Origin: Asterias rubens
Taxonomy: Eukaryota
Assembly: GCF_902459465.1 (NCBI RefSeq)
Contig: NC_047072.1
Location: 14,818,001 to 14,882,000, forward strand
Direction: 5' to 3'
Length of the DNA stretch: 64,000 nucleotides
Shown: in pieces, positions 22,249 through 56,200 of the stretch
Layout of the letters: every line of letters starts with the position of its first letter
How positions within the stretch are numbered: the first letter of the stretch is position 1
Made by a program: the position numbers and the translations under genes
Notes under the pieces: model-generated
Seen by the model: only the letters and a program-made list of their open reading frames with translations
Databases searched by the model: none
Told to the model about the DNA's origin: nothing

Positions 22249-25200
22249 ATGGGTGTACTATCAACACTTCCTAAGGAGTATGGATATGTCGTCCTGGTGG
22301 GCTCAGCCAGTTATGTTATGTTGAGCTATTTGGGAATTAAAGTCAGTATGGCTAGAAAGAAATATGAAGTAGAGGTTGGTATTTCTCTATCTAATTTTGG
22401 TCCTCTCAAATAATAACACTGTACACATGAAACAATTGCTATTGTTCCTGGATTTGGTAGAGCGCTGGCACATTCATCCAGAGGTCGCAAAACCAGCTCC
22501 TGTCAACTCCAAATTTCTTTAACAAAACTCTTTCTTTGTTTTGTTCAGTGTTGAGAGGTTCAGCCATTAGAATTTAAGCAATTCTGTCATAAAATAATGG
22601 TGTCACTGTAAATACTAGAGCAAATAAATAAATGTAAATTTGTCAATACAAAAGCATTTTAAACAAGAGGTGTTTCGCTAACAGCAACACCTAAACTAAA
22701 AATGTATACAAAAAATTCTAGATAAACAACTTTTAAGCTTATGAATAAAGTATACACTGTAGGCTTGTATGATTACACAAACTACTGTATCTTTTTGGTT
22801 ATATTATAATTGTAGGTTTTACTGTGTGTAATCTTTTATTTTAACTGGTTCTTAAGTAGAGGTTTACAGAGTTTTATTTTCTGTGTTTGTTCTTGAACAG
22901 TACCCAGCTATGTACAGTGATTCTCAGCCATTGTTTAACTGTGTACAGAGAGCTCATCAAAACACGTGAGTAAGCTAAACTGAATTCAAAATTACAGAAT
23001 AGTTATTCAAATTGCCTTGTTAACAGCATTTTGGTGTGTAAAAATATGATATGTAATTCGAAAGTTCCCACCAATGGTCTTCCTTTGTTGAAGATAATTT
23101 CAAACAACCAATAAGTGTAACTTGAGATAAATACTTGGGCCTTAAAGAGTTGCATAACCACAACAAAATAGCCGAGTACAATCAAATTAAGCTTTCCAAA
23201 ATAAGTTTACCATCCAACATACCATTTCTTATGTTTCCTGTGACTAGTGTAGTATCCTGCTCATTTCTTTTAAGCTAACAAGTTTTAAGGCTATTTTCTC
23301 CTCAAGTTAAGTCGCTCTATGAATTGTAAACTTCATTTACATTGTAGTTCTGAAGCCTTGGACATCGCCGAGGTTGGTTAATTGAAATAACTCGATACCT
23401 CGATCTGCCTTCTTTTAAATGCTCTGTAGAACCATTTAATTTTCTACACCAGTTAACATATCCCTTGTTCAAGTAATGGTTTTGGTTGAATTGCCAGTGC
23501 CTTCCTGAATGGTTTTCTTCTCTTCAATTTAAAATAACTGACAGTCAAAGATCCAAAAGTTAAAACTGGTTGTGTTTTGTATATCCATTGCAGTTTGGAG
23601 GCGTATCCACCATTCCTGTTTTTCCTGGCAATGTCAGGGATTAGATTTCCGGTAAGAAGTAGTCTAGTGGCCAAAATGCAGCTCGGGCAAAGACATCATT
23701 TTGGAAGGCTATTTAATATATTGAACCATTTATATGTGCATTTGTTTCAATTTTATTTTGGACGTGGTGGATGCAGGGTTCTTAGTTCTTAGTTTTTGTG
23801 TTTTGTTTTCTCAAAATGAGGGCCTTCTAATTTATGACATTTTCATGGGTTGGTTTACTGATGTGAATGTTGAATAGAGTGTTGGGATTAATTAAAACCT
23901 TGATCTAGATTAAATGTCAGGAGATGAAATATGTATACATCAAACCAGGCCCCCCCCCCAAAAAAAAAAAAAAAAAAAACAGCCTTGGAGGCCATAACCT
24001 CTGTTTTTGTGCCCGTTCAAAGGTGTCCCATAGACTTTAGTATGTTCCAATGGAATTTCCCTTTGCAAAATGAAAATGGAAAGCCCTCTCAACAGATTAC
24101 ATTCCAGGACTGGTACACACATATTGGTACTGTCAACAGCTCCCCAATACTCATTACCAAGTAAGTTTTTATGCTAACAATTATTTTGAGTAAATTACCA
24201 ATAGTGTCCACTGCCTTTAATGCAAAAGGTGGTTACACATAGAATAATCCTCACCCTGAGGCGTAAAGTCATTGTCAGTTGTTACTTTTGACAACCTCTT
24301 TATTACCACACTCTTGTTATTGTAGAGAGCATCAGCTGCATGTGGTGCAGTATGGATCTTGAGTCGATTCAGCTATGCTCATGGCTACTACACAGGAGGT
24401 AAACAGAGTTTACTGAATAAGGATTCATCAGTCATTGTTTTATAGTAATGCAAGAAAAGATGATGGGGGTTGCTGGATAAAGATTCTGCTGTGAATTCTA
24501 AAAACTCTTTTGAGAATCATGCTTGATTTATACAGTGTGTGCCCTTTTCTTGCAAAGGATTTACCCATATGAATGAATTGAATGCTATGTGAGGAACGTA
24601 CCTCTGCCATCCCTTTTTAGTGTGAAAAGGCCTAAAGTTGGACTTGAGCATACCAGTGCTAATCAGTTATACAGGATGGCAGGGCATATTGGTGGTTCTA
24701 TTCTAAAACAGTAAAGTATTAAGAAGTATCATCACATACCTCAGGGTTCTGCCCACAGTGGCCGGTGCCAGAAAACCCGCCCGGCACTTCACATACCTCA
24801 GGGTTCTGCCCACAGTGGCAGGTGCCAGAAAACCCGCCCGGCACTTCACATACCTCAGGGTTCTGCCCACAGTGGCCGGTGCCAGAAAACCCGCCCGGCA
24901 CTTCACATACCTCAGGGTTCTGCCCATAGTGGCCGGTGCCAGAAAACCCGCCCGGCACTTCACATACCTCAGGGTTCTGCCCATAGTGGCCGGTGCCAGA
25001 AAACCTGCCCGGCACTTCACATACCTCAGGGTTCTGCCCATAGTGGCCGGTGCCAGAAAACCCGCCCGGCACTTCACATACCTCAGGGTTCTGCCCACAG
25101 TGGCAGGTGCCAGAAAATCCGCCCGGCACTTCACATACATCAGGGTTCTGCCCATAGTGGCCGGTGCCAGAAAACCTGCCCGGCACTTCACATACCTCAG

Positions 25201-27683
25201 GGTTCTGCCCATAGTGGCAGGTGCCAGAAAACCCGCCCGGCACTTCACATACCTCAGGGTTCTGCCCAAAGTGGCAGGTGCCAGAAAACCCGCCCGGCAC
25301 TTCACATACCTCAGGGTTCTGCAAACAGTGGCCGGTGCCAGAAAACCCGCCCGGCACTTCACATACCTCAGGGTTCTGCAAACAGTGGCCGGTGCCAGAA
25401 AACCCGCCCGGCACTTCACATACCTCAGGGTTCTGCAAACAGTGGCCGGTGCCAGAAAACCCGCCCGGCACTTCACATACCTCAGGGTTCTGCCCATAGT
25501 GGCCGGTGCCAGAAAACCCGCCCGGCACTTCACATACCTCAGGGTTCTGCCCATAGTGGCCGGTGCCAGAAAACCCGCCCGGCACTTCACATACCTCAGG
25601 GTTCTGCCCACAGTGGCCGGTGCCAGAAAACCCGCCCGGCACTTCACATACCTCAGGGTTCTGCCCATAGTGGCAGGTGCCAGAAAACCCGCCCGGCACT
25701 TCACATACCTCAGGGTTCTGCCCATAGTGGCCGGTGCCAGAAAACCCGCCCGGCACTTCACATACCTCAGGGTTCTGCCCACAGTGGCAGGTGCCAGAAA
25801 ACCCGCCCGGCACTTCACATACCTCAGGGTTCTGCCCACAGTGGCCGGTGCCAGAAAACCCGCCCGGCACTTCACATACCTCAGGGTTCTGCCCACAGTG
25901 GCAGGTGCCAGAAAACCCGCCCGGCACTTCACATACCTCAGGGTTCTGCCCACAGTGGCCGGTGCCAGAAAACCCGCCCGGCACTTCACATACCTCAGGG
26001 TTCTGCCCATAGTGGCCGGTGCCAGAAAACCCGCCCGGCACTTCACATACCTCAGGGTTCTGCCCATAGTGGCCGGTGCCAGAAAACCCGCCCGGCACTT
26101 CACATACCTCAGGGTTCTGCCCATAGTGGCCGGTGCCAGAAAACCCGCCCGGCACTTCACATACCTCAGGGTTCTGCAAACAGTGGCCGGTGCCAGAAAA
26201 CCCGCCCGGCACTTCACATACCTCAGGGTTCTGCCCACAGTGGCCGGTGCCAGAAAACCCGCCCGGCACTTCACATACCTCAGGGTTCTGCCCACAGTGG
26301 CAGGTGCCAGAAAACCCGCCCGGCACTTCACATACCTCAGGGTTCTGCCCACAGTGGCCGGTGCCAGAAAACATGCCCGGCACTTCACATACCTCAGGGT
26401 TCTGCCCATAGTGGCAGGTGCCAGAAAACCCGCCCGGCACTTCACATACCTCAGGGTTCTGCCCATAGTGGCCGGTGCCAGAAAACCCGCCCGGCACTTC
26501 ACATACCTCAGGGTTCTGCCCATAGTGGCCGGTGCCAGAAAACATGCCCGGCACTTCACATACCTCAGGGTTCTGCCCACAGTGGCCGGTGCCAGAAAAC
26601 CCGCCCGGCACTTCACATACCTCAGGGTTCTGCCCACAGTGGCCGGTGCCAGAAAACATGCCCGGCACTTCACATACCTCAGGGTTCTGCCCATAGTGGC
26701 AGGTGCCAGAAAACCCGCCCGGCACTTCACATACCTCAGGGTTCTGCCCATAGTGGCCGGTGCCAGAAAACCCGCCCGGCACTTCACATACCTCAGGGTT
26801 CTGCCCACAGTGGCCGGTGCCAGAAAACCCGCCCGGCACTTCACATACCTCAGGGTTCTGCCCACAGTGGCAGGTGCCAGAAAACCCGCCCGGCACTTCA
26901 CATACCTCAGGGTTCTGCCCACAGTGGCCGGTGCCAGAAAACCCGCCCGGCACTTCACATACCTCAGGGTTCTGCCCATAGTGGCAGGTGCCAGAAAACC
27001 CGCCCGGCACTTCACATACCTCAGGGTTCTGCCCACAGTGGCCGGTGCCAGAAAACCCGCCCGGCACTTCACATACCTCAGGGTTCTGCCCATAGTGGCC
27101 GGTGCCAGAAAACCCGCCCGGCACTTCACATACCTCAGGGTTCTGCCCATAGTGGCCGGTGCCAGAAAACCCGCCCGGCACTTCACATACCTCAGGGTTC
27201 TGCCCATAGTGGCCGGTGCCAGAAAACATGCCCGGCACTTAGGATTCCCCAACCACCACTGGAAAAATGTCCTCTGTTTCCGTCCACCACACATTTTACT
27301 AATTTTTAAATCACCCTTGCAATGTCCTATCAAAGGTTTTCAACGAAATGTAAATTGGGTGTTTATCAGTAAGAATGGTATCCGAAGCCATTAATTTTGA
27401 GCACTTCTTTGATTTAAGTCTACCATGTAACTGATCCATCTCGCAATGGTTTCCAGGGAAACATTTTTCCACCACTAAAGAAATTCTGGGCAGAACCCTG
27501 ATACCCTCCCCATCCAGTCAACAAGCATTTATTTTACCATTCAATTTCATTGTATTTTATTCTGCCTTTGTTTTTTGTCAAGAACCGAAGAAGCGTACGC
27601 GTGGAGCCTATGGATATCCAGCCATGCTTGGACTCTTTGGAATGACAATTGCCTTCGCTGTTCGTCAACTCCAGTGGGTCTAA
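22249..27683 (+). CDS. MGST3: Microsomal glutathione S-transferase 3 (MAPEG family), 140 aa; absent from the ORF track because its exons are short
   Basis: Exons 22249-22374, 22901-22965, 23594-23651, 24326-24398, 27583-27683; 423 nt. Translation [21 protein letters not shown]...[18 protein letters not shown]...[22 protein letters not shown]...[20 protein letters not shown]...LQWV*, with the MAPEG motif FNCxQRAHQN. Confidence 0.95.
24120..24220. mobile_element. Terminal fragment of the TTAA-flanked MITE family
   Basis: Reverse complement of the left ~100 bp of 10878-11248, ending GTGTCCACTGCCT|TTAA. Confidence 0.75.
24733..27240. repeat. Minisatellite, exactly 44 x 57 bp, in MGST3 intron 4
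   Basis: Unit CACATACCTCAGGGTTCTGCCCACAGTGGCCGGTGCCAGAAAACCCGCCCGGCACTT; 2508 bp = 44 x 57; no indels, a few recurrent substitutions. Confidence 0.98.
27193..27500. mobile_element. 308-bp MITE with CAGGG termini (hAT-like) whose left end forms the 57-bp array
   Basis: 14-bp perfect TIR CAGGGTTCTGCCCA (27193) / TGGGCAGAACCCTG (27487-27500). Flanks ATACCT and ATACCC(T) look like a degenerate target duplication. Confidence 0.8.
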
Positions 27684-29467
27684 AACGTCTAGCACTGATT
27701 TTGAATTGATTAAGAGGTGTGCAGTATAATTAGACTAGATAGTGCTGATCAGTTATATGAATATGGTGCATGTATAAATGTCTTGATTGGTCAGAGCTCA
27801 TTTGTAGTTTAGACATTTATTTCAATATTGGCAACAACAAACAAATGTATGAAGTATCCTATAAGCGTTACATACAGACTACAAACAGTGCTTGAAACAT
27901 CATTATTACAAATTTATGATACCTAGACCTAGACTGTTAATGTTATATTATTCATTGGACAATCTGAGATTTAAAAAATTGTATCAGGAAACTACTTGAA
28001 CATTATGCATTGTTCATTATTTAATCAGGTGGTAGCCATAGAGCAAGGCCGTTTTGAATCATTTGAATCCAAAAGCATCCAATCAGACACCTTCAAGTTT
28101 TGGATTTAGTCCCCAGGGAAATACAGGACGGCTTGTAGGTAGGTTGTTATTTGAAAATGGAGCTATATATTGAAATAGTTGCATTGTACGTGTTTAATTG
28201 TATTCCATTGTTTCTTTTGGAAGAATTTAATTATCTTTGTAATCTAGTGTTCGATTATTTTCTAACTAATCTTGTTTGTACTGCAGAATAAATTAGTCCG
28301 AGTAAATTTACTTGCAATATCAAAGCACAAAGACATTCTTAGTTTCCTTTTACACATGGTTGGTAGGACACTGTTGGAAAAATTACTCTTGCATTACTAA
28401 AATGTTCCTTTGCACCAATGCAGTCAATCGCCTCCAAGTTGCCTGGCAAAGTTGCCTTGTGTATTTTCAAGTCACTTACTCTTAATTATATATTAAGGCA
28501 AGTATACACGCACATAGGTTGTTATATTGATAAAGGATATGCAGTATCCCTTTTGTGTTGGTGTTGCGCAAAATATTCACAGGGCTTAGTGTATGCCAGT
28601 ACAGTTAGTGATTCCTCAATGATGGCAACACTTGTTTTATGGATAAGCTATTTTTCATATACTTAGGATATTATATACTTTGAAGATTACCTTTAAAATT
28701 AGCTAAAATATATTCTCATATTGACAGCTGTGTAATACAATTCCACCTCAGTGAGATCCCTGCAAATTTGTCATTTTGTATTACCACATGAAGCAAGGAT
28801 CACCACATGAAGCAAGTTAGTTTTAGCTGACCAACTGCCTTCTGATTAACAACTCAAATTATGAATTTGTAAAGATGGGTTGAAAATATTGATGAAAAGA
28901 GTATAATATATATTTTTACAATTCAGATTTTAACTGTGTACAATTTATTGAGGACAGAATGAAATAATATGCAAATATATTAGATTTTGTAATTCCTAAT
29001 ATTGGATTGTATGATTGTGTTATTTTTGTGACGATCTGTCTGTCATGTCTGTTATGTTAGTGAAAGCTTGCATCTTTTCAGTTTAAGAAACTGAAGGATT
29101 GAGATATGACATACAGTCTTGTGATAATGCTTTCTTATGATTATTACTTTTCATGAAGACTTGTGTACTTTACAGTATTACCCCTGTTAATCAGACACTA
29201 AGCAGTCTCCCTAGGAGTATGCAGCACCATCAGCAAAATGGGTGCACAATGTGCTTAAAGTTCACACAATCCAATCCCCACCTTCACAGCTACCCATTTA
29301 CTTATCGGTGATAAGAAGCAATGTCAAATGTCTTGCTAAAAGGGAACAAGTCTCACACGAACCCACACTCCAATGTATCAACCATTAGAACTTGAGGCGC
29401 TCTTAGCGCTACCCATTTCTTCTATACTGGGGGGGGGGGGTAACTGATATGTGCGTTCTTGCCTCGT

Positions 29468-53200: not shown

Positions 53201-56200
53201 TCAGAAAATGTATCAATGCTGGCTGGCATTAGCATGCACACAATGTCCACTCGTCTGAAGTAATAGATTTTTATTACTATTGATACCTCACCTTGCAATG
53301 CCTCAAATCCCATATTACCTTACCTGATTATAAATCCTGCTTTAACATTGATCATTCCTTCAATGTTTCCATCATGCATTCATTTAATTGTCAAATCAAA
53401 TGCTCATAAAATACATCTGCATAATGCTAACACTCTCTGCAAAAGTGTATAGGATCAAAGAATGATATACAGATTGCTATAAATGTGCTGTTTAATGTGT
53501 GCATTTATTTTAATGCTGGGTCAAAAGAGTAAGTATGGAACCACACTTAGAGGAATATCAGATGAAAAAGAAAATGTTCTGTGTTTTGGTATTTATTTTG
53601 GTATTTTGGGAGTCGGATTTCTGTCAGAGTCCAAGGGGAACATTTGAAAAGACTTTTTGTTTCATGTGTGAGATTGCTTGTCATAAAGTTAGTTCAATGG
53701 TAGACTTTGAGACTATAACTGGCATCCCACTCACAAGCCCTTTTCTATTGTTCTTGTCGCTGATAATTTGGGGACTGGTGTGTTGGACACCCGCTACTGA
53801 AAAAAGACAGTTTTTAACTTAATAAAGTGTCTGTTTGATAAAGGTTTCCTTTATCTAAATTTCATTTTTGTTTAAGCTACTTAACTTTGCTTCTTCTACT
53901 TGTGGGAAAGAAGTTAAGTTTTTAGAACGTTCATGTTTTTGAAATGATTTAATTTGTGGTTGTATCATTTACTATCAGGTGGTATTCCTCCATCTCGATG
54001 GGTGGTCAATTTTGACTATGATCTCTTGGATGGGTTGGTGCTGGCAGCTGTCTTGGCTGCGCACGTGCCTTTTCTGGTAAGTGGAAGAAGTAGTGAGTGA
54101 AAAGATGTGGAAAAGCTTTTCAATAAGATGTCAAAGTTGAATTATACAAATCTCTGCTTTGTTAACTGTTGCCCATCTATTGTCGTAGTTTATAGCTCAT
54201 AATCTAACTCAGATTTTGTTCGATTTTTGAAATACACATTATTCATTTGATGAACTTGTAGTTATTTTTCTTTTTATTTAATTTTTACACTGGTAATAAT
54301 CACATGGAAAAAATGATGGTTCTGAAAAAAAACGTATTGCTTTTTTCTGAATGTTGTGACAAATGTTATGTGAGGCAAAAGTATTAATCAATGGAGTGCA
54401 ACAAGAATTCACTGAATATTGATCCCAACAGTGTAAACCCTAAAACTGTACACGATTTGATCTACTTGTAGATTAAGACCCATTCACTGAATATTGATCC
54501 CAGCAGTGTAAACCCTAAAACTGTACATGATTTGATCTACTTGTAGATTAAGACCAATTCACTGAATATTGATGCCAACAGTGCAAACCCTAAAACTGTA
54601 CATGATTTGATCTACTTGTAGATTAAGACCCATTCACTGAATATTGATCCCAACAGTGTAAACCCTAAAACTGTACATGATTTGATGTACTTGTAGATTA
54701 AGACCCATTCACTGAATATTGATGCCAACAGTGTAAACCCTAAAACTGTACATCATTTGATCTACTTGTAGATTAAGACCCATTCACTGAATATTGATCC
54801 CAACAGTGTAAACCCTAAAACTGTACATGATTTGATCTACTTGTAGATTAAGACCCATTCACTGAATATTGATGCCAACAGTGCAAACCCTAAAACTGTA
54901 CATGATTTGATCTACTTGTAGATTAAGACCCATTCACTGAATATTGATCCCAACAGTGTAAACCCTAAAACTGTACATGATTTGATCTACTTGTAGATTA
55001 AGACCCATTCACTGAATATTGATGCCAACAGTGTAAACCCTAAAACTGTACATGATTTGATCTACTTGTAGATTAAGACCCATTCACTGAATATTGATGC
55101 CAACAGTGCAAACCCTAAAACTGTACATGATTTGATCTACTTGTAGATTAAGACCCATTCACTGAATATTGATGCCAACAGTGTAAACCCTAAAACTGTA
55201 CATCATTTGATCTACTTGTAGATTAAGACCCATTCACTAAATATTGATCCCAACAGTGTAAACCCTAAAACTCTACATCATTTGATCTACTTGTAGATTA
55301 AGACCCATTCACTAAATATTGATGCCAACAGTGTAAACCCTAAAACTGTACATCATTTGATCTACTTGTAGATTAAGACCCATTCACTAAATATTGATGC
55401 CAACAGTGTAAACCCTAAAACTGTACATCATTTGATCTACTTGTAGATTAAGACCCATTCACTGAATATTGATCCCAACAGTGTAAACCCTAAAACTGTA
55501 CATCATTTGATCTACTTGTAGATTAAGACCCATTCACTGAATATTGATCCCAACAGTGTAAACCCTAAAACTGTACATCATTTGATCTACTCTACTTGTA
55601 GATTAAGACCCATTCATTGAATATTGATCCCAACAGTGTAAACCCTAAAACTGTACATCATTTGATCTACTTGTAGATTAAGACCCATTCACTGAATATT
55701 GATGCCAACAGTGTAAACCCTAAAACTGTACATCATTTGATCTACTTGTAGATTAAGACCCATCTACAGAGTATGTACACCCAGCCAGCTACAGCTGAAC
55801 AGTGTCTTCATAATGCTCTCAAGGTGGTGAATGCATTTAGATACATCGGACTAGACTATGATATCCAGGCTATAGACATCACTGATCCTAATCCTATCTC
55901 TCTACTGCTACTATGCGTTCATCTGTACCAGCGATTGCCTCAGTATACACCAAGAACAACTGTGGAGTTTATTGGATCCTTGCATGCATGTGTTGCACGA
56001 CAGGTGAGTCTAATGCTTTGAAGTACTTGTTCTACTCACTGTACACCAAATTAATTGAAATCTCACTAATAAATGCATGCATGAGTTTTTCTTTTTTGCT
56101 GTGAACAAAAATTACAATGTTTCTTGTATTTTTTGTTCTTTGATAAAGGTTCGTCTGACCAATCCGAGTAGCAAGCCCCTGACATATCATGCAATGATCG

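What the first reader, a model, noticed from the sequence alone, without database searches (positions are those of the whole stretch)
24733..27500. 2.5-kb minisatellite born from a transposon-host junction inside MGST3 intron 4
Seen: the unit is 9 bp of host flank (CACATACCT) plus the first 48 bp of a MITE beginning CAGGGTTCTGCCCA. After copy 44 the sequence runs on into the MITE body and ends at the single matching right TIR (27487-27500). The locus therefore carries 44 left TIRs and one right TIR. This records the origin of a satellite from a DNA-transposon end. Inference: a cognate transposase could pair the right end with any left end, excising variable lengths and driving copy-number change, and the array may titrate transposase.
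Basis: partly seen in the sequence, partly recalled or inferred. Interest (0 to 1): 0.7.

Follow-up and report, generated by a model that had tools for sequence, protein, structure and literature searches.

The report
Minisatellite spanning a transposon-host junction
A 57-letter piece made of the left tip of an old miniature transposon plus nine letters of its insertion site has been copied head to tail 44 times inside the last intron of a sea-star MGST3-like gene; this is real and shows its origin clearly, but it is an ordinary local repeat expansion in a genome full of such repeats.

Summary
Window 24733-27240 holds 44 copies of a 57-bp unit at 97% identity. Each unit is 9 bp of host flank plus the first 48 bp of a roughly 310-bp MITE. 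The last unit runs on into the MITE body, which ends at one right TIR (27487-27500). I add that six of the nine host bases are the element's 6-bp target-site duplication: ATACCT on the left and ATACCC beyond the right end.

The MITE is an old dispersed family of about 140 copies, 82% alike on average, each with one left end and its own flanks. The unit-to-unit junction occurs 43 times in the 417.6-Mb genome, all of them here.

An RNA-like run shows the intron spliced out normally. A relative about 3.7% divergent has the MITE at this site, apparently with a single left end.

The array most likely grew by a chance tandem duplication followed by slippage or unequal exchange. This genome carries about one minisatellite per 15 kb, so roughly one such junction array is expected for this family by chance.

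The transposase-pairing and titration idea has no support: no autonomous partner was found, the family is old, and the unit boundaries do not coincide with the transposase cut site.

The scan noted the same design earlier on other DNA of this genome (s1-150515).

The parts
24326..24398 (+). MGST3-like coding exon 4 (peptide ending ...[12 protein letters not shown]), followed by a GT donor at 24399
   Evidence: Frame translation and DNA. An RNA-like contig in run X3 joins its last 30 bases to the last exon (loose end before 27581).
24399..27582 (+). Last intron of the MGST3-like gene, 3184 bp, of which 2768 bp (87%) are array plus MITE
   Evidence: GT at 24399 and AG at 27581-27582. Spliced contig in X3.
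24733..27240 (+). Minisatellite of 44 units of 57 bp. Each unit is 3 bp of flank, the 6-bp left TSD and the first 48 bp of the MITE.
   Evidence: TRF. There are 8 variable sites and 11 unit types in interspersed order, and mean unit divergence is 3.1%.
24736..24741 (+). Left target-site duplication copy ATACCT, in the first unit and repeated in every unit
   Evidence: Compared with the right copy ATACCC (5 of 6 bases match). Perfect 6-bp TSDs are seen in L004, L015 and L028.
27193..27500 (+). The complete MITE (308 bp), formed by the element part of unit 44 plus the unrepeated body. It has 14-bp TIRs, CA...TG termini and no coding capacity.
   Evidence: BLAST and alignment to 19 full-length family copies covering positions 1-308.
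27487..27500 (+). The single right TIR, TGGGCAGAACCCTG
   Evidence: Inverted-repeat scan: 100% complementary to the left termini.
27501..27506 (+). Right target-site duplication copy ATACCC
   Evidence: Direct reading; family TSD length.
27583..27683 (+). Coding part of the last MGST3-like exon ([16 protein letters not shown]...QLQWV, then stop)
   Evidence: Translation. Exact RNA-like contig 27581-27836 in X3.

Best explanation
This is a locus-specific minisatellite. An old non-autonomous DNA transposon inserted into the last intron of an MGST3-like gene. The element is about 310 bp long, with 14-bp TIRs beginning CAGGG and a 6-bp target-site duplication, and is probably a hAT6-type MITE. Later, a 57-bp segment that happened to straddle the left host/element junction was duplicated in tandem. 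That segment is 3 bp of flank, the 6-bp TSD and 48 bp of the element, and the duplication joint has only 1 bp of microhomology. The dimer then grew to 44 units by replication slippage and unequal sister-chromatid or allelic exchange, which also shuffled the unit variants. The array is removed with the intron and has no demonstrated function. Shown here: the anatomy, the uniqueness of the junction, the dispersed single-end family, normal splicing, and the high background of minisatellites. Inferred: the duplication and expansion mechanism, and the timing relative to the divergent relative.
For: The array and its anatomy are established. The family is dispersed, and each copy has one left end and its own flanks; perfect 6-bp TSDs are seen in L004, L015 and L028, and 5-of-6 matches in four further copies including this one. 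The unit junction is found only here, 43 of 43 hits. Family copies are 82% alike on average, against 97% among units, so the array is much younger than the family or is being homogenised. There are eleven unit types in the mosaic order ABACDCEFGHIIICCAGCBABACCCIABJGCKAJGCABAGACCK, with repeated multi-unit blocks, as unequal exchange produces. The derived CATG variant of the terminal unit is shared with three internal units, whereas the divergent relative has CCCG there, so the terminal unit takes part in the exchange. Background density is 13 arrays with period of at least 10 and at least 4 copies in 201 kb of other loci, six of them at least 750 bp long at 95-97% identity, plus a second 1.4-kb array in this window. 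With about 190-280 family ends, that density predicts about 0.7-1 array seeded across an end by chance. In run X10 (about 3.7% divergent), one contig bridges the MITE right end and the flank. Another matches 27183-27396 and then runs 535 bp leftward into sequence unlike the array, as a single-copy state would. In run X8, an exact contig across the unit 43/44 junction has depth 304 against 11 for single-copy flank, indicating tens of units. The standard two-step model of minisatellite origin is summarised in PMC6947457.
Against: The founding duplication has only 1 bp of microhomology (T), not the 5-10 bp flanking repeats of the classical Haber-Louis model. The unit's hairpin is no stronger than shuffled sequence (z -0.8), so no structural trigger was identified. 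Two family members, and possibly three, have an end amplified, where about one is expected. An earlier scan note (s1-150515) claims that transposon ends are hot spots in this genome. A modest end-specific enhancement therefore cannot be excluded. The single-copy reading of the relative rests on one short-read contig whose left 535 bp I could not compare with the left flank.
Confidence: 0.8

Rival explanations
1. Transposase-driven origin or dynamics. A cognate transposase cutting at the left end started the duplication, through a break at the TSD/TIR joint that was repaired with re-synthesis. It may still pair the one right end with any of the 44 left ends, changing copy number and being titrated by the array.
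For: The unit contains the transposase cleavage site, an intact TIR and 34 bp of subterminal sequence. This locus holds 41 of the 116 exact TIR 14-mers in the genome and 40 of the 83 well-preserved left-end 20-mers. A second family member has its left TIR amplified 18 times. The genome has hAT transposase ORFs with long open frames.
Against: No element bounded by this TIR with coding capacity was found. Of the 13 extra left ends fetched, 12 are MITE copies or fragments and one (L070) is a solo left end with no recognisable element behind it. No listed TIR lies within 10 kb of a hAT domain hit. The family is old, at 82% pairwise identity. The duplication boundaries lie 9 bp outside and 48 bp inside the element, not at the cleavage site, so nick- or break-defined duplication at the transposon end does not fit. 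From established knowledge of Ac/Ds alternative transposition, pairing of a right end with internal left ends would delete units or break the chromosome rather than build an array. All units share identical breakpoints, so there was one founding event.
Confidence: 0.1
2. Rolling-circle or extrachromosomal amplification. A 57-bp circle or a looped template was copied many times at once and integrated by homology at the locus, and point variants accumulated afterwards.
For: All 44 units have identical length with no indels, and the junction has almost no microhomology. The TE-to-satellite literature lists rolling-circle routes (PMC12628747).
Against: Nothing specific points to this route. The variant mosaic needs later exchange in any case. 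Minisatellites of many periods are common throughout this genome, which is explained more simply by one general replication or recombination process.
Confidence: 0.06
3. The reverse direction: a pre-existing 57-bp satellite supplied the left end of the MITE family, so the element captured satellite sequence.
For: Capture of tandem repeats by MITEs has been proposed for other families, for example miDNA4 (PMC12628747).
Against: The unit contains 9 bp that no other family copy has. All 19 full-length copies align over positions 1-48 with a single copy of it. The TSD brackets a single element and its right copy lies outside the array. The divergent relative appears to have the single-copy state.
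Confidence: 0.02

Closest known systems
Minisatellites born inside dispersed repeats (human Alu-derived and LTR-derived minisatellites, mouse Ms6-hm in a MaLR LTR, the B1-derived VNTR family), with origin by a small duplication followed by slippage or unequal exchange (Armour 1989, Kelly 1994, Bois 1998 and Haber & Louis 1998, as reviewed in PMC6947457)
   Same: A single old TE copy at one locus supplies the founding unit. The array is locus-specific, has interspersed variant units, and is non-coding.
   Different: Here the unit crosses the element boundary and includes the TSD and 3 bp of unique flank. The founder is a DNA-transposon MITE in an echinoderm. The founding joint has only 1 bp of microhomology, not a 5-10 bp flanking repeat.
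MITE-derived and foldback-derived satellites: Xstir and miDNA4 in Xenopus, Tetris in Drosophila virilis, tandem-repeat-containing MITEs of bivalves (PMC12628747, PMC4079207, PMC9659126)
   Same: Tandem repeats are made of DNA-transposon terminal or subterminal sequence, and the array sits next to an otherwise intact element.
   Different: In those systems the repeats are internal to the element, are carried to many loci by transposition, or have become genome-wide satellites. This unit includes host flank and exists at only one locus.
Junction-spanning and boundary-spanning minisatellites already noted in this genome by this scan: s1-150515 (TTAA-target element end plus flank), s1-150678 (MITE-internal arrays), and the splice-junction 'mirage' arrays in s1-150317
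   Same: Same genome and the same design: a short tandem array whose unit straddles a recognisable sequence boundary. All were judged to be local expansions.
   Different: This involves a different transposon family (6-bp TSD, CAGGG termini), a larger array (44 units, 2.5 kb), and indirect cross-sample evidence for the single-copy precursor.
Multi-end Ac/Ds configurations that undergo alternative transposition in maize (from my own knowledge of the hAT literature)
   Same: Several transposon ends in direct orientation sit close to one opposite end.
   Different: Those cases have an active transposase and documented rearrangements. Here no transposase partner was found and the family is old.

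Membership tests
Minisatellite (VNTR-type local tandem array) | Head-to-tail array of a 10-100 bp unit with high identity between copies | tested here: met
   57 bp x 44.0 copies, 97% matches, no indels.
Minisatellite (VNTR-type local tandem array) | Interspersed variant units indicating exchange within the array | tested here: met
   8 variable sites and 11 unit types in mosaic order with repeated multi-unit blocks.
Minisatellite (VNTR-type local tandem array) | Copy-number variation between individuals | tested here: inconclusive
Short-read contigs give only a depth ratio of about 27 in X8 and a probable single-copy state in the divergent X10.
MITE (non-autonomous cut-and-paste DNA transposon) | Terminal inverted repeats | tested here: met
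   14 of 14 bp complementary, and conserved in other copies.
MITE (non-autonomous cut-and-paste DNA transposon) | Target-site duplication of fixed length | tested here: met
   6 bp: perfect in L004, L015 and L028, and 5 of 6 in four more copies including the window copy.
MITE (non-autonomous cut-and-paste DNA transposon) | Short, non-coding, with many dispersed copies in different flanks | tested here: met
   About 310-330 bp. At least 141 candidates, 40 scored, on many contigs. About 69 left ends and about 124 right ends are recognisable.
MITE (non-autonomous cut-and-paste DNA transposon) | Autonomous partner sharing the TIRs | tested here: inconclusive
   None was found behind 13 extra left ends or near 32 hAT-domain hits.
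hAT superfamily, hAT6 group | 6-bp TSD (hAT6; classical hAT gives 8 bp) and short TIRs with CA...TG, YARNG-type termini | tested here: met
   6-bp TSD and CAGGG...CCCTG termini. hAT6 is defined by 6-bp TSDs in PMC12730594. The YARNG motif is from my own knowledge.
hAT superfamily, hAT6 group | Derivation from an element encoding a hAT transposase | tested here: inconclusive
   hAT transposase ORFs exist in the genome, but none could be tied to this TIR.
IS3EU/GingerRoot (the other 6-bp-TSD superfamily) | TA...TA termini (occasionally TG...CA) | tested here: not met
   The termini here are CA...TG. The criterion is from PMC10045372.
Transposon-borne satellite DNA (Tetris, miDNA4, Xstir type) | The same repeat unit present as arrays at many loci or carried inside mobile copies | tested here: not met
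   The unit junction is confined to this locus. Other copies have one left end.

The most novel reading that the evidence does not exclude
Ends of cut-and-paste transposons may be preferred birthplaces of minisatellites in this sea-star genome, because end-specific nicks, breaks or bound proteins stall replication there. If so, this locus with 40 intact left termini facing one right terminus would be a natural multi-end substrate, whose copy number a surviving hAT6-type transposase could still alter. My data show two arrays, perhaps three, at ends of this family where about one is expected, which neither establishes nor excludes this.
Probability: 0.1. Interest if true: 0.55.

Novelty: new member of a known kind. 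Interest (0 to 1): 0.25.

Why it matters
The locus is a very clear record of how a minisatellite is born. The precursor can be read from the last unit, from the family's other copies and probably from a related lineage, so both breakpoints of the founding duplication are known to the base. The founding unit turns out to be arbitrary with respect to the transposon boundary. That makes the locus a good teaching case and a possible copy-number-variable marker. It is also a warning for annotation: three of the six reading frames are open through the array, for 839-878 codons. It does not reveal a new mechanism. The array is spliced out with the intron, and this genome produces such arrays everywhere.

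Tried and rejected
Following the tool's own advice I laid only the last nine units plus the right side, so the left flank could not be compared and allele lengths were not measured.

2. The hairpin idea fails. The unit's imperfect palindrome folds no better than shuffled sequence, with z of -0.8 to -0.3.

3. I considered a 6-bp microhomology (CTCAGG) between the flank/TIR joint and family-consensus positions 46-51. It would give a 48-bp unit, not the observed 57 bp, and this copy has T rather than C at that position. Rejected.

4. Hunt for the autonomous partner. Of the 13 extra left ends, 12 are MITE copies or fragments and one (L070) is a solo end with nothing recognisable behind it. I did not try another tool to get round that. 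I only compared coordinates, and none lay within 10 kb.

5. The third array at C14:15152397-15153670 could not be assigned to the left or right end, or to a chance 11-mer. Its letters were no longer printed and the lists were truncated.

6. IS3EU was considered because of the 6-bp TSD and rejected on its termini.

7. The scan's own index found nothing by sequence.

8. The spliced MGST3 protein was not assembled.

9. The large protein searches were not used, since no claim here rests on a protein.
Full report
**Observation**

Tandem Repeats Finder reports one array at window 24732-27240: period 57, 44.0 copies, 97% matches, no indels, score 4640. Read directly, every unit is CACATACCT followed by 48 bp that begin CAGGGTTCTGCCCA. 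After unit 44 (27184-27240) the sequence leaves the repeat and runs through 260 bp of unique-looking sequence. It ends at TGGGCAGAACCCTG (27487-27500), the exact inverted copy of the unit's 14-bp terminus. Forty units keep the exact 14-mer and four carry CAGGGTTCTGCAAA.

**Is it a transposon?**

- The body 27241-27500 has at least 141 candidate copies in the window's own genome (417.6 Mb, 150 contigs). The 40 that were scored are 74-86% identical and lie on many contigs.
- With the single-copy equivalent 27193-27500 (308 bp) as query, the other loci show one left end each and a total length of about 310-330 bp.
- Their termini are conserved and their flanks all differ. Three copies have perfect 6-bp target-site duplications: ATGAAA in L004, ATGATA in L015 and CATGGG in L028. 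Four more match at 5 of 6 positions.
- The window copy is one of those four, with ATACCT to the left of the element and ATACCC to the right (27501-27506). The "9 bp of host flank" in the unit is therefore 3 bp of unique flank plus the left TSD copy.
- Nineteen full-length copies align over the whole element with mean pairwise identity 0.82, and positions 1-48 of the unit are homologous to the single left end of each.
- There is no coding capacity. This is a MITE family of moderate size: about 69 recognisable dispersed left ends and about 124 right ends.
- The CA...TG termini and the 6-bp TSD fit the hAT6 group, which PMC12730594 defines as hAT families with 6-bp TSDs. They do not fit IS3EU, which also makes 6-bp TSDs but has TA...TA ends (PMC10045372).
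- I could not link the family to a transposase, so the superfamily assignment remains probable rather than shown.

**Is the unit locus-specific?**

The 27-mer across the unit-to-unit joint (end of the 48-bp element piece, CACATACCT, start of the TIR) is found 43 times in the genome at up to 3 mismatches. All 43 lie in this array, and there are no control hits. Neither is the second, the absence of dispersed elements with this TIR.

**Gene context**

I read the exons one by one by reference and did not join them.

- Five MGST3-like coding exons lie on the + strand, at about 22249-22377, 22900-22966, 23590-23650, 24326-24398 and 27583-27683.
- The array and MITE occupy 2768 bp of the 3184-bp last intron, 24399-27582.
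- In run X3, which behaves as RNA, an exact contig starts at 27581. Its overhang is the last 30 bases of the preceding exon (24367-24396, with two synonymous differences). The intron with the array is therefore spliced out normally.

**Other samples**

Following the tool's advice I laid 26728-28100. All runs were short-read contigs.

- In X1 (organism A, probably the source sample), exact contigs cover the step from the last unit into the body, and from the right end into the flank.
- In X8 (organism C), an exact 87-bp contig bridges the unit 43/44 joint at depth 304, against 11 for the single-copy flank. That indicates an array of tens of units.
- In X10 (organism D), a 458-bp contig with 17 differences (about 3.7%) bridges the MITE right end and the flank, so the insertion is shared.
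- Also in X10, a 749-bp contig matches 27183-27396 with 6 differences and then continues 535 bp to the left into sequence that does not match array units. It stops matching exactly where a single-copy state predicts (T, CACATACCT, element).
- A contig passing through both would-be branch points also argues for one unit in that lineage. I could not compare those 535 bp with the left flank, so this stays a strong hint rather than a demonstration.
- X10 has CCCG at 27227-27230, where the window's terminal unit has CATG. CATG is shared by three internal units, so the terminal unit takes part in exchange.

**How the array grew**

- The 44 units differ at 8 sites and fall into 11 types. Their order is ABACDCEFGHIIICCAGCBABACCCIABJGCKAJGCABAGACCK.
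- Variants are shared by non-adjacent units and multi-unit blocks recur (ABAC, JGC, III). This is the usual signature of repeated unequal exchange or slippage.
- Mean unit divergence is 3.1%.
- All units share the same breakpoints, so there was a single founding duplication.
- The founding joint has 1 bp of microhomology, a T that precedes CACATACCT in the flank and ends the 48-bp element piece. That is less than the 5-10 bp flanking repeats of the classical Haber-Louis model as summarised in PMC6947457.
- The unit's imperfect palindrome is not more stable than shuffled sequence.
- The breakpoints lie 9 bp outside and 48 bp inside the element, not at the TSD/TIR joint where a transposase cuts. 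A break or nick at the transposon end therefore does not define the unit.

**Is a junction array surprising here?**

- In 201 kb of other loci from this genome I found 13 arrays with period of at least 10 and at least 4 copies. Six are at least 750 bp long at 95-97% identity.
- The window itself has a second array, 75 bp x 18.
- At about 6.7e-5 arrays per base and a mean unit near 50 bp, a given point falls inside a founding unit with probability of about 0.35%. With 190-280 family ends, about 0.7-1 end-spanning array is expected by chance.
- I found this one and a second at C2:8502822-8503059 (L005). There the left TIR itself is repeated 18 times with a 14-bp period, flanked by the CAG...CAG microhomology of element positions 1 and 15.
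- A third array, at C14:15152397-15153670, has a period of about 90 bp and carries the 11-bp TIR core. It does not match the left end at up to 2 mismatches, and it could be a chance 11-mer.
- Two observed against about one expected is not significant. A modest preference for ends cannot be excluded.
- Earlier notes of this scan describe the same design at another element family in this genome and claim many such arrays (s1-150515). Others describe MITE-internal, SINE-internal and splice-junction arrays that were judged ordinary (s1-150678, s1-150633, s1-150317). Those notes also name the organism as the common sea star. I did not verify the name; the runs I saw are coded.

**The transposase inference**

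- This locus holds 41 of the genome's 116 exact TIR 14-mers and 40 of the 83 well-preserved left-end 20-mers, so on paper it is a large cluster of ends.
- However, the family is old.
- Of the thirteen further left ends I fetched, twelve are MITE copies or fragments and one (L070) is a solo end with nothing recognisable behind it.
- The genome's 32 hAT dimerisation-domain hits include open frames of 523-757 codons. None lies within 10 kb of a listed TIR.
- The search was not exhaustive: no further genome DNA could be cut out, and the last rows of the lists were not shown.
- From what is known of multi-end Ac/Ds configurations (my own knowledge), an active transposase would delete units or break the chromosome rather than build the array.
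- I therefore rate the transposase reading at about 0.1.

**Comparison with what is known**

Minisatellites that arise inside a single copy of a dispersed repeat have been known since 1989 (Alu, LTR and B1 cases listed in PMC6947457). MITE- and foldback-derived satellites are well reviewed (PMC12628747, PMC9659126, PMC4079207). This array behaves like the first group. It fails the defining feature of the second group, because its unit is not carried to other loci. Its particular point is that the unit crosses the element boundary and includes the TSD, which proves that the array arose after insertion and in place.

**Verdict**

The functional inference is unsupported. This is a new member of a known kind, and it is of low to moderate interest.

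Noticed in passing
L005:1782-2035 (G000:C2:8502822-8503059, minus strand): Another copy of the same MITE family has its left TIR itself (CAGGGTTCTGCCCA) repeated 18 times with a 14-bp period, directly abutting the flank and followed by the normal element. The CAG at element positions 1 and 15 provides the flanking microhomology.
   Followed up: partly
G000:C14:15152397-15153670 (not fetched): An array of 15 copies with a period of about 90 bp, each containing the 11-bp TIR core GGTTCTGCCCA. It does not match the left end at up to 2 mismatches. Its relation to the MITE family is unresolved, and it may be a chance 11-mer.
   Followed up: partly
window 54407-55763: A second large minisatellite in the same window, 75 bp x 18 at 96% matches. 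The scan has already noted it as a CFAP47 splice-acceptor array.
   Followed up: no
L011:2301-3123, L014:2509-3268, L018:2249-3136, L028:2452-3261, L030:1-830: Five unrelated high-identity minisatellites (periods 168, 68, 89, 45 and 139; 95-97% matches) within about 95 kb of arbitrary loci. Three of them run off the end of the locus. This shows how dense such arrays are in this genome.
   Followed up: partly
window 24703-27394, three reading frames: Because 57 bp equals 19 codons, the array is open in three of the six frames, giving mechanical ORFs of 839-878 codons. Gene predictors could mistake these for a repetitive protein.
   Followed up: no
run X3, contig record 22 (1861 bp, depth about 1060): Another member of the MITE family sits inside a highly expressed transcript in an RNA-like run. 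It aligns to the TIR and the right end but differs in the middle.
   Followed up: no
window 24367-24396: The RNA-like contig differs from the window at two synonymous third-codon positions in the penultimate MGST3-like exon, while the last exon and 3' region are identical. This is probably allelic variation.
   Followed up: no
L070:201-228 (G000:C14:13169313): A solo left end of the family: 28 bp of terminus followed by unrelated sequence, with no right TIR within 8 kb.
   Followed up: partly
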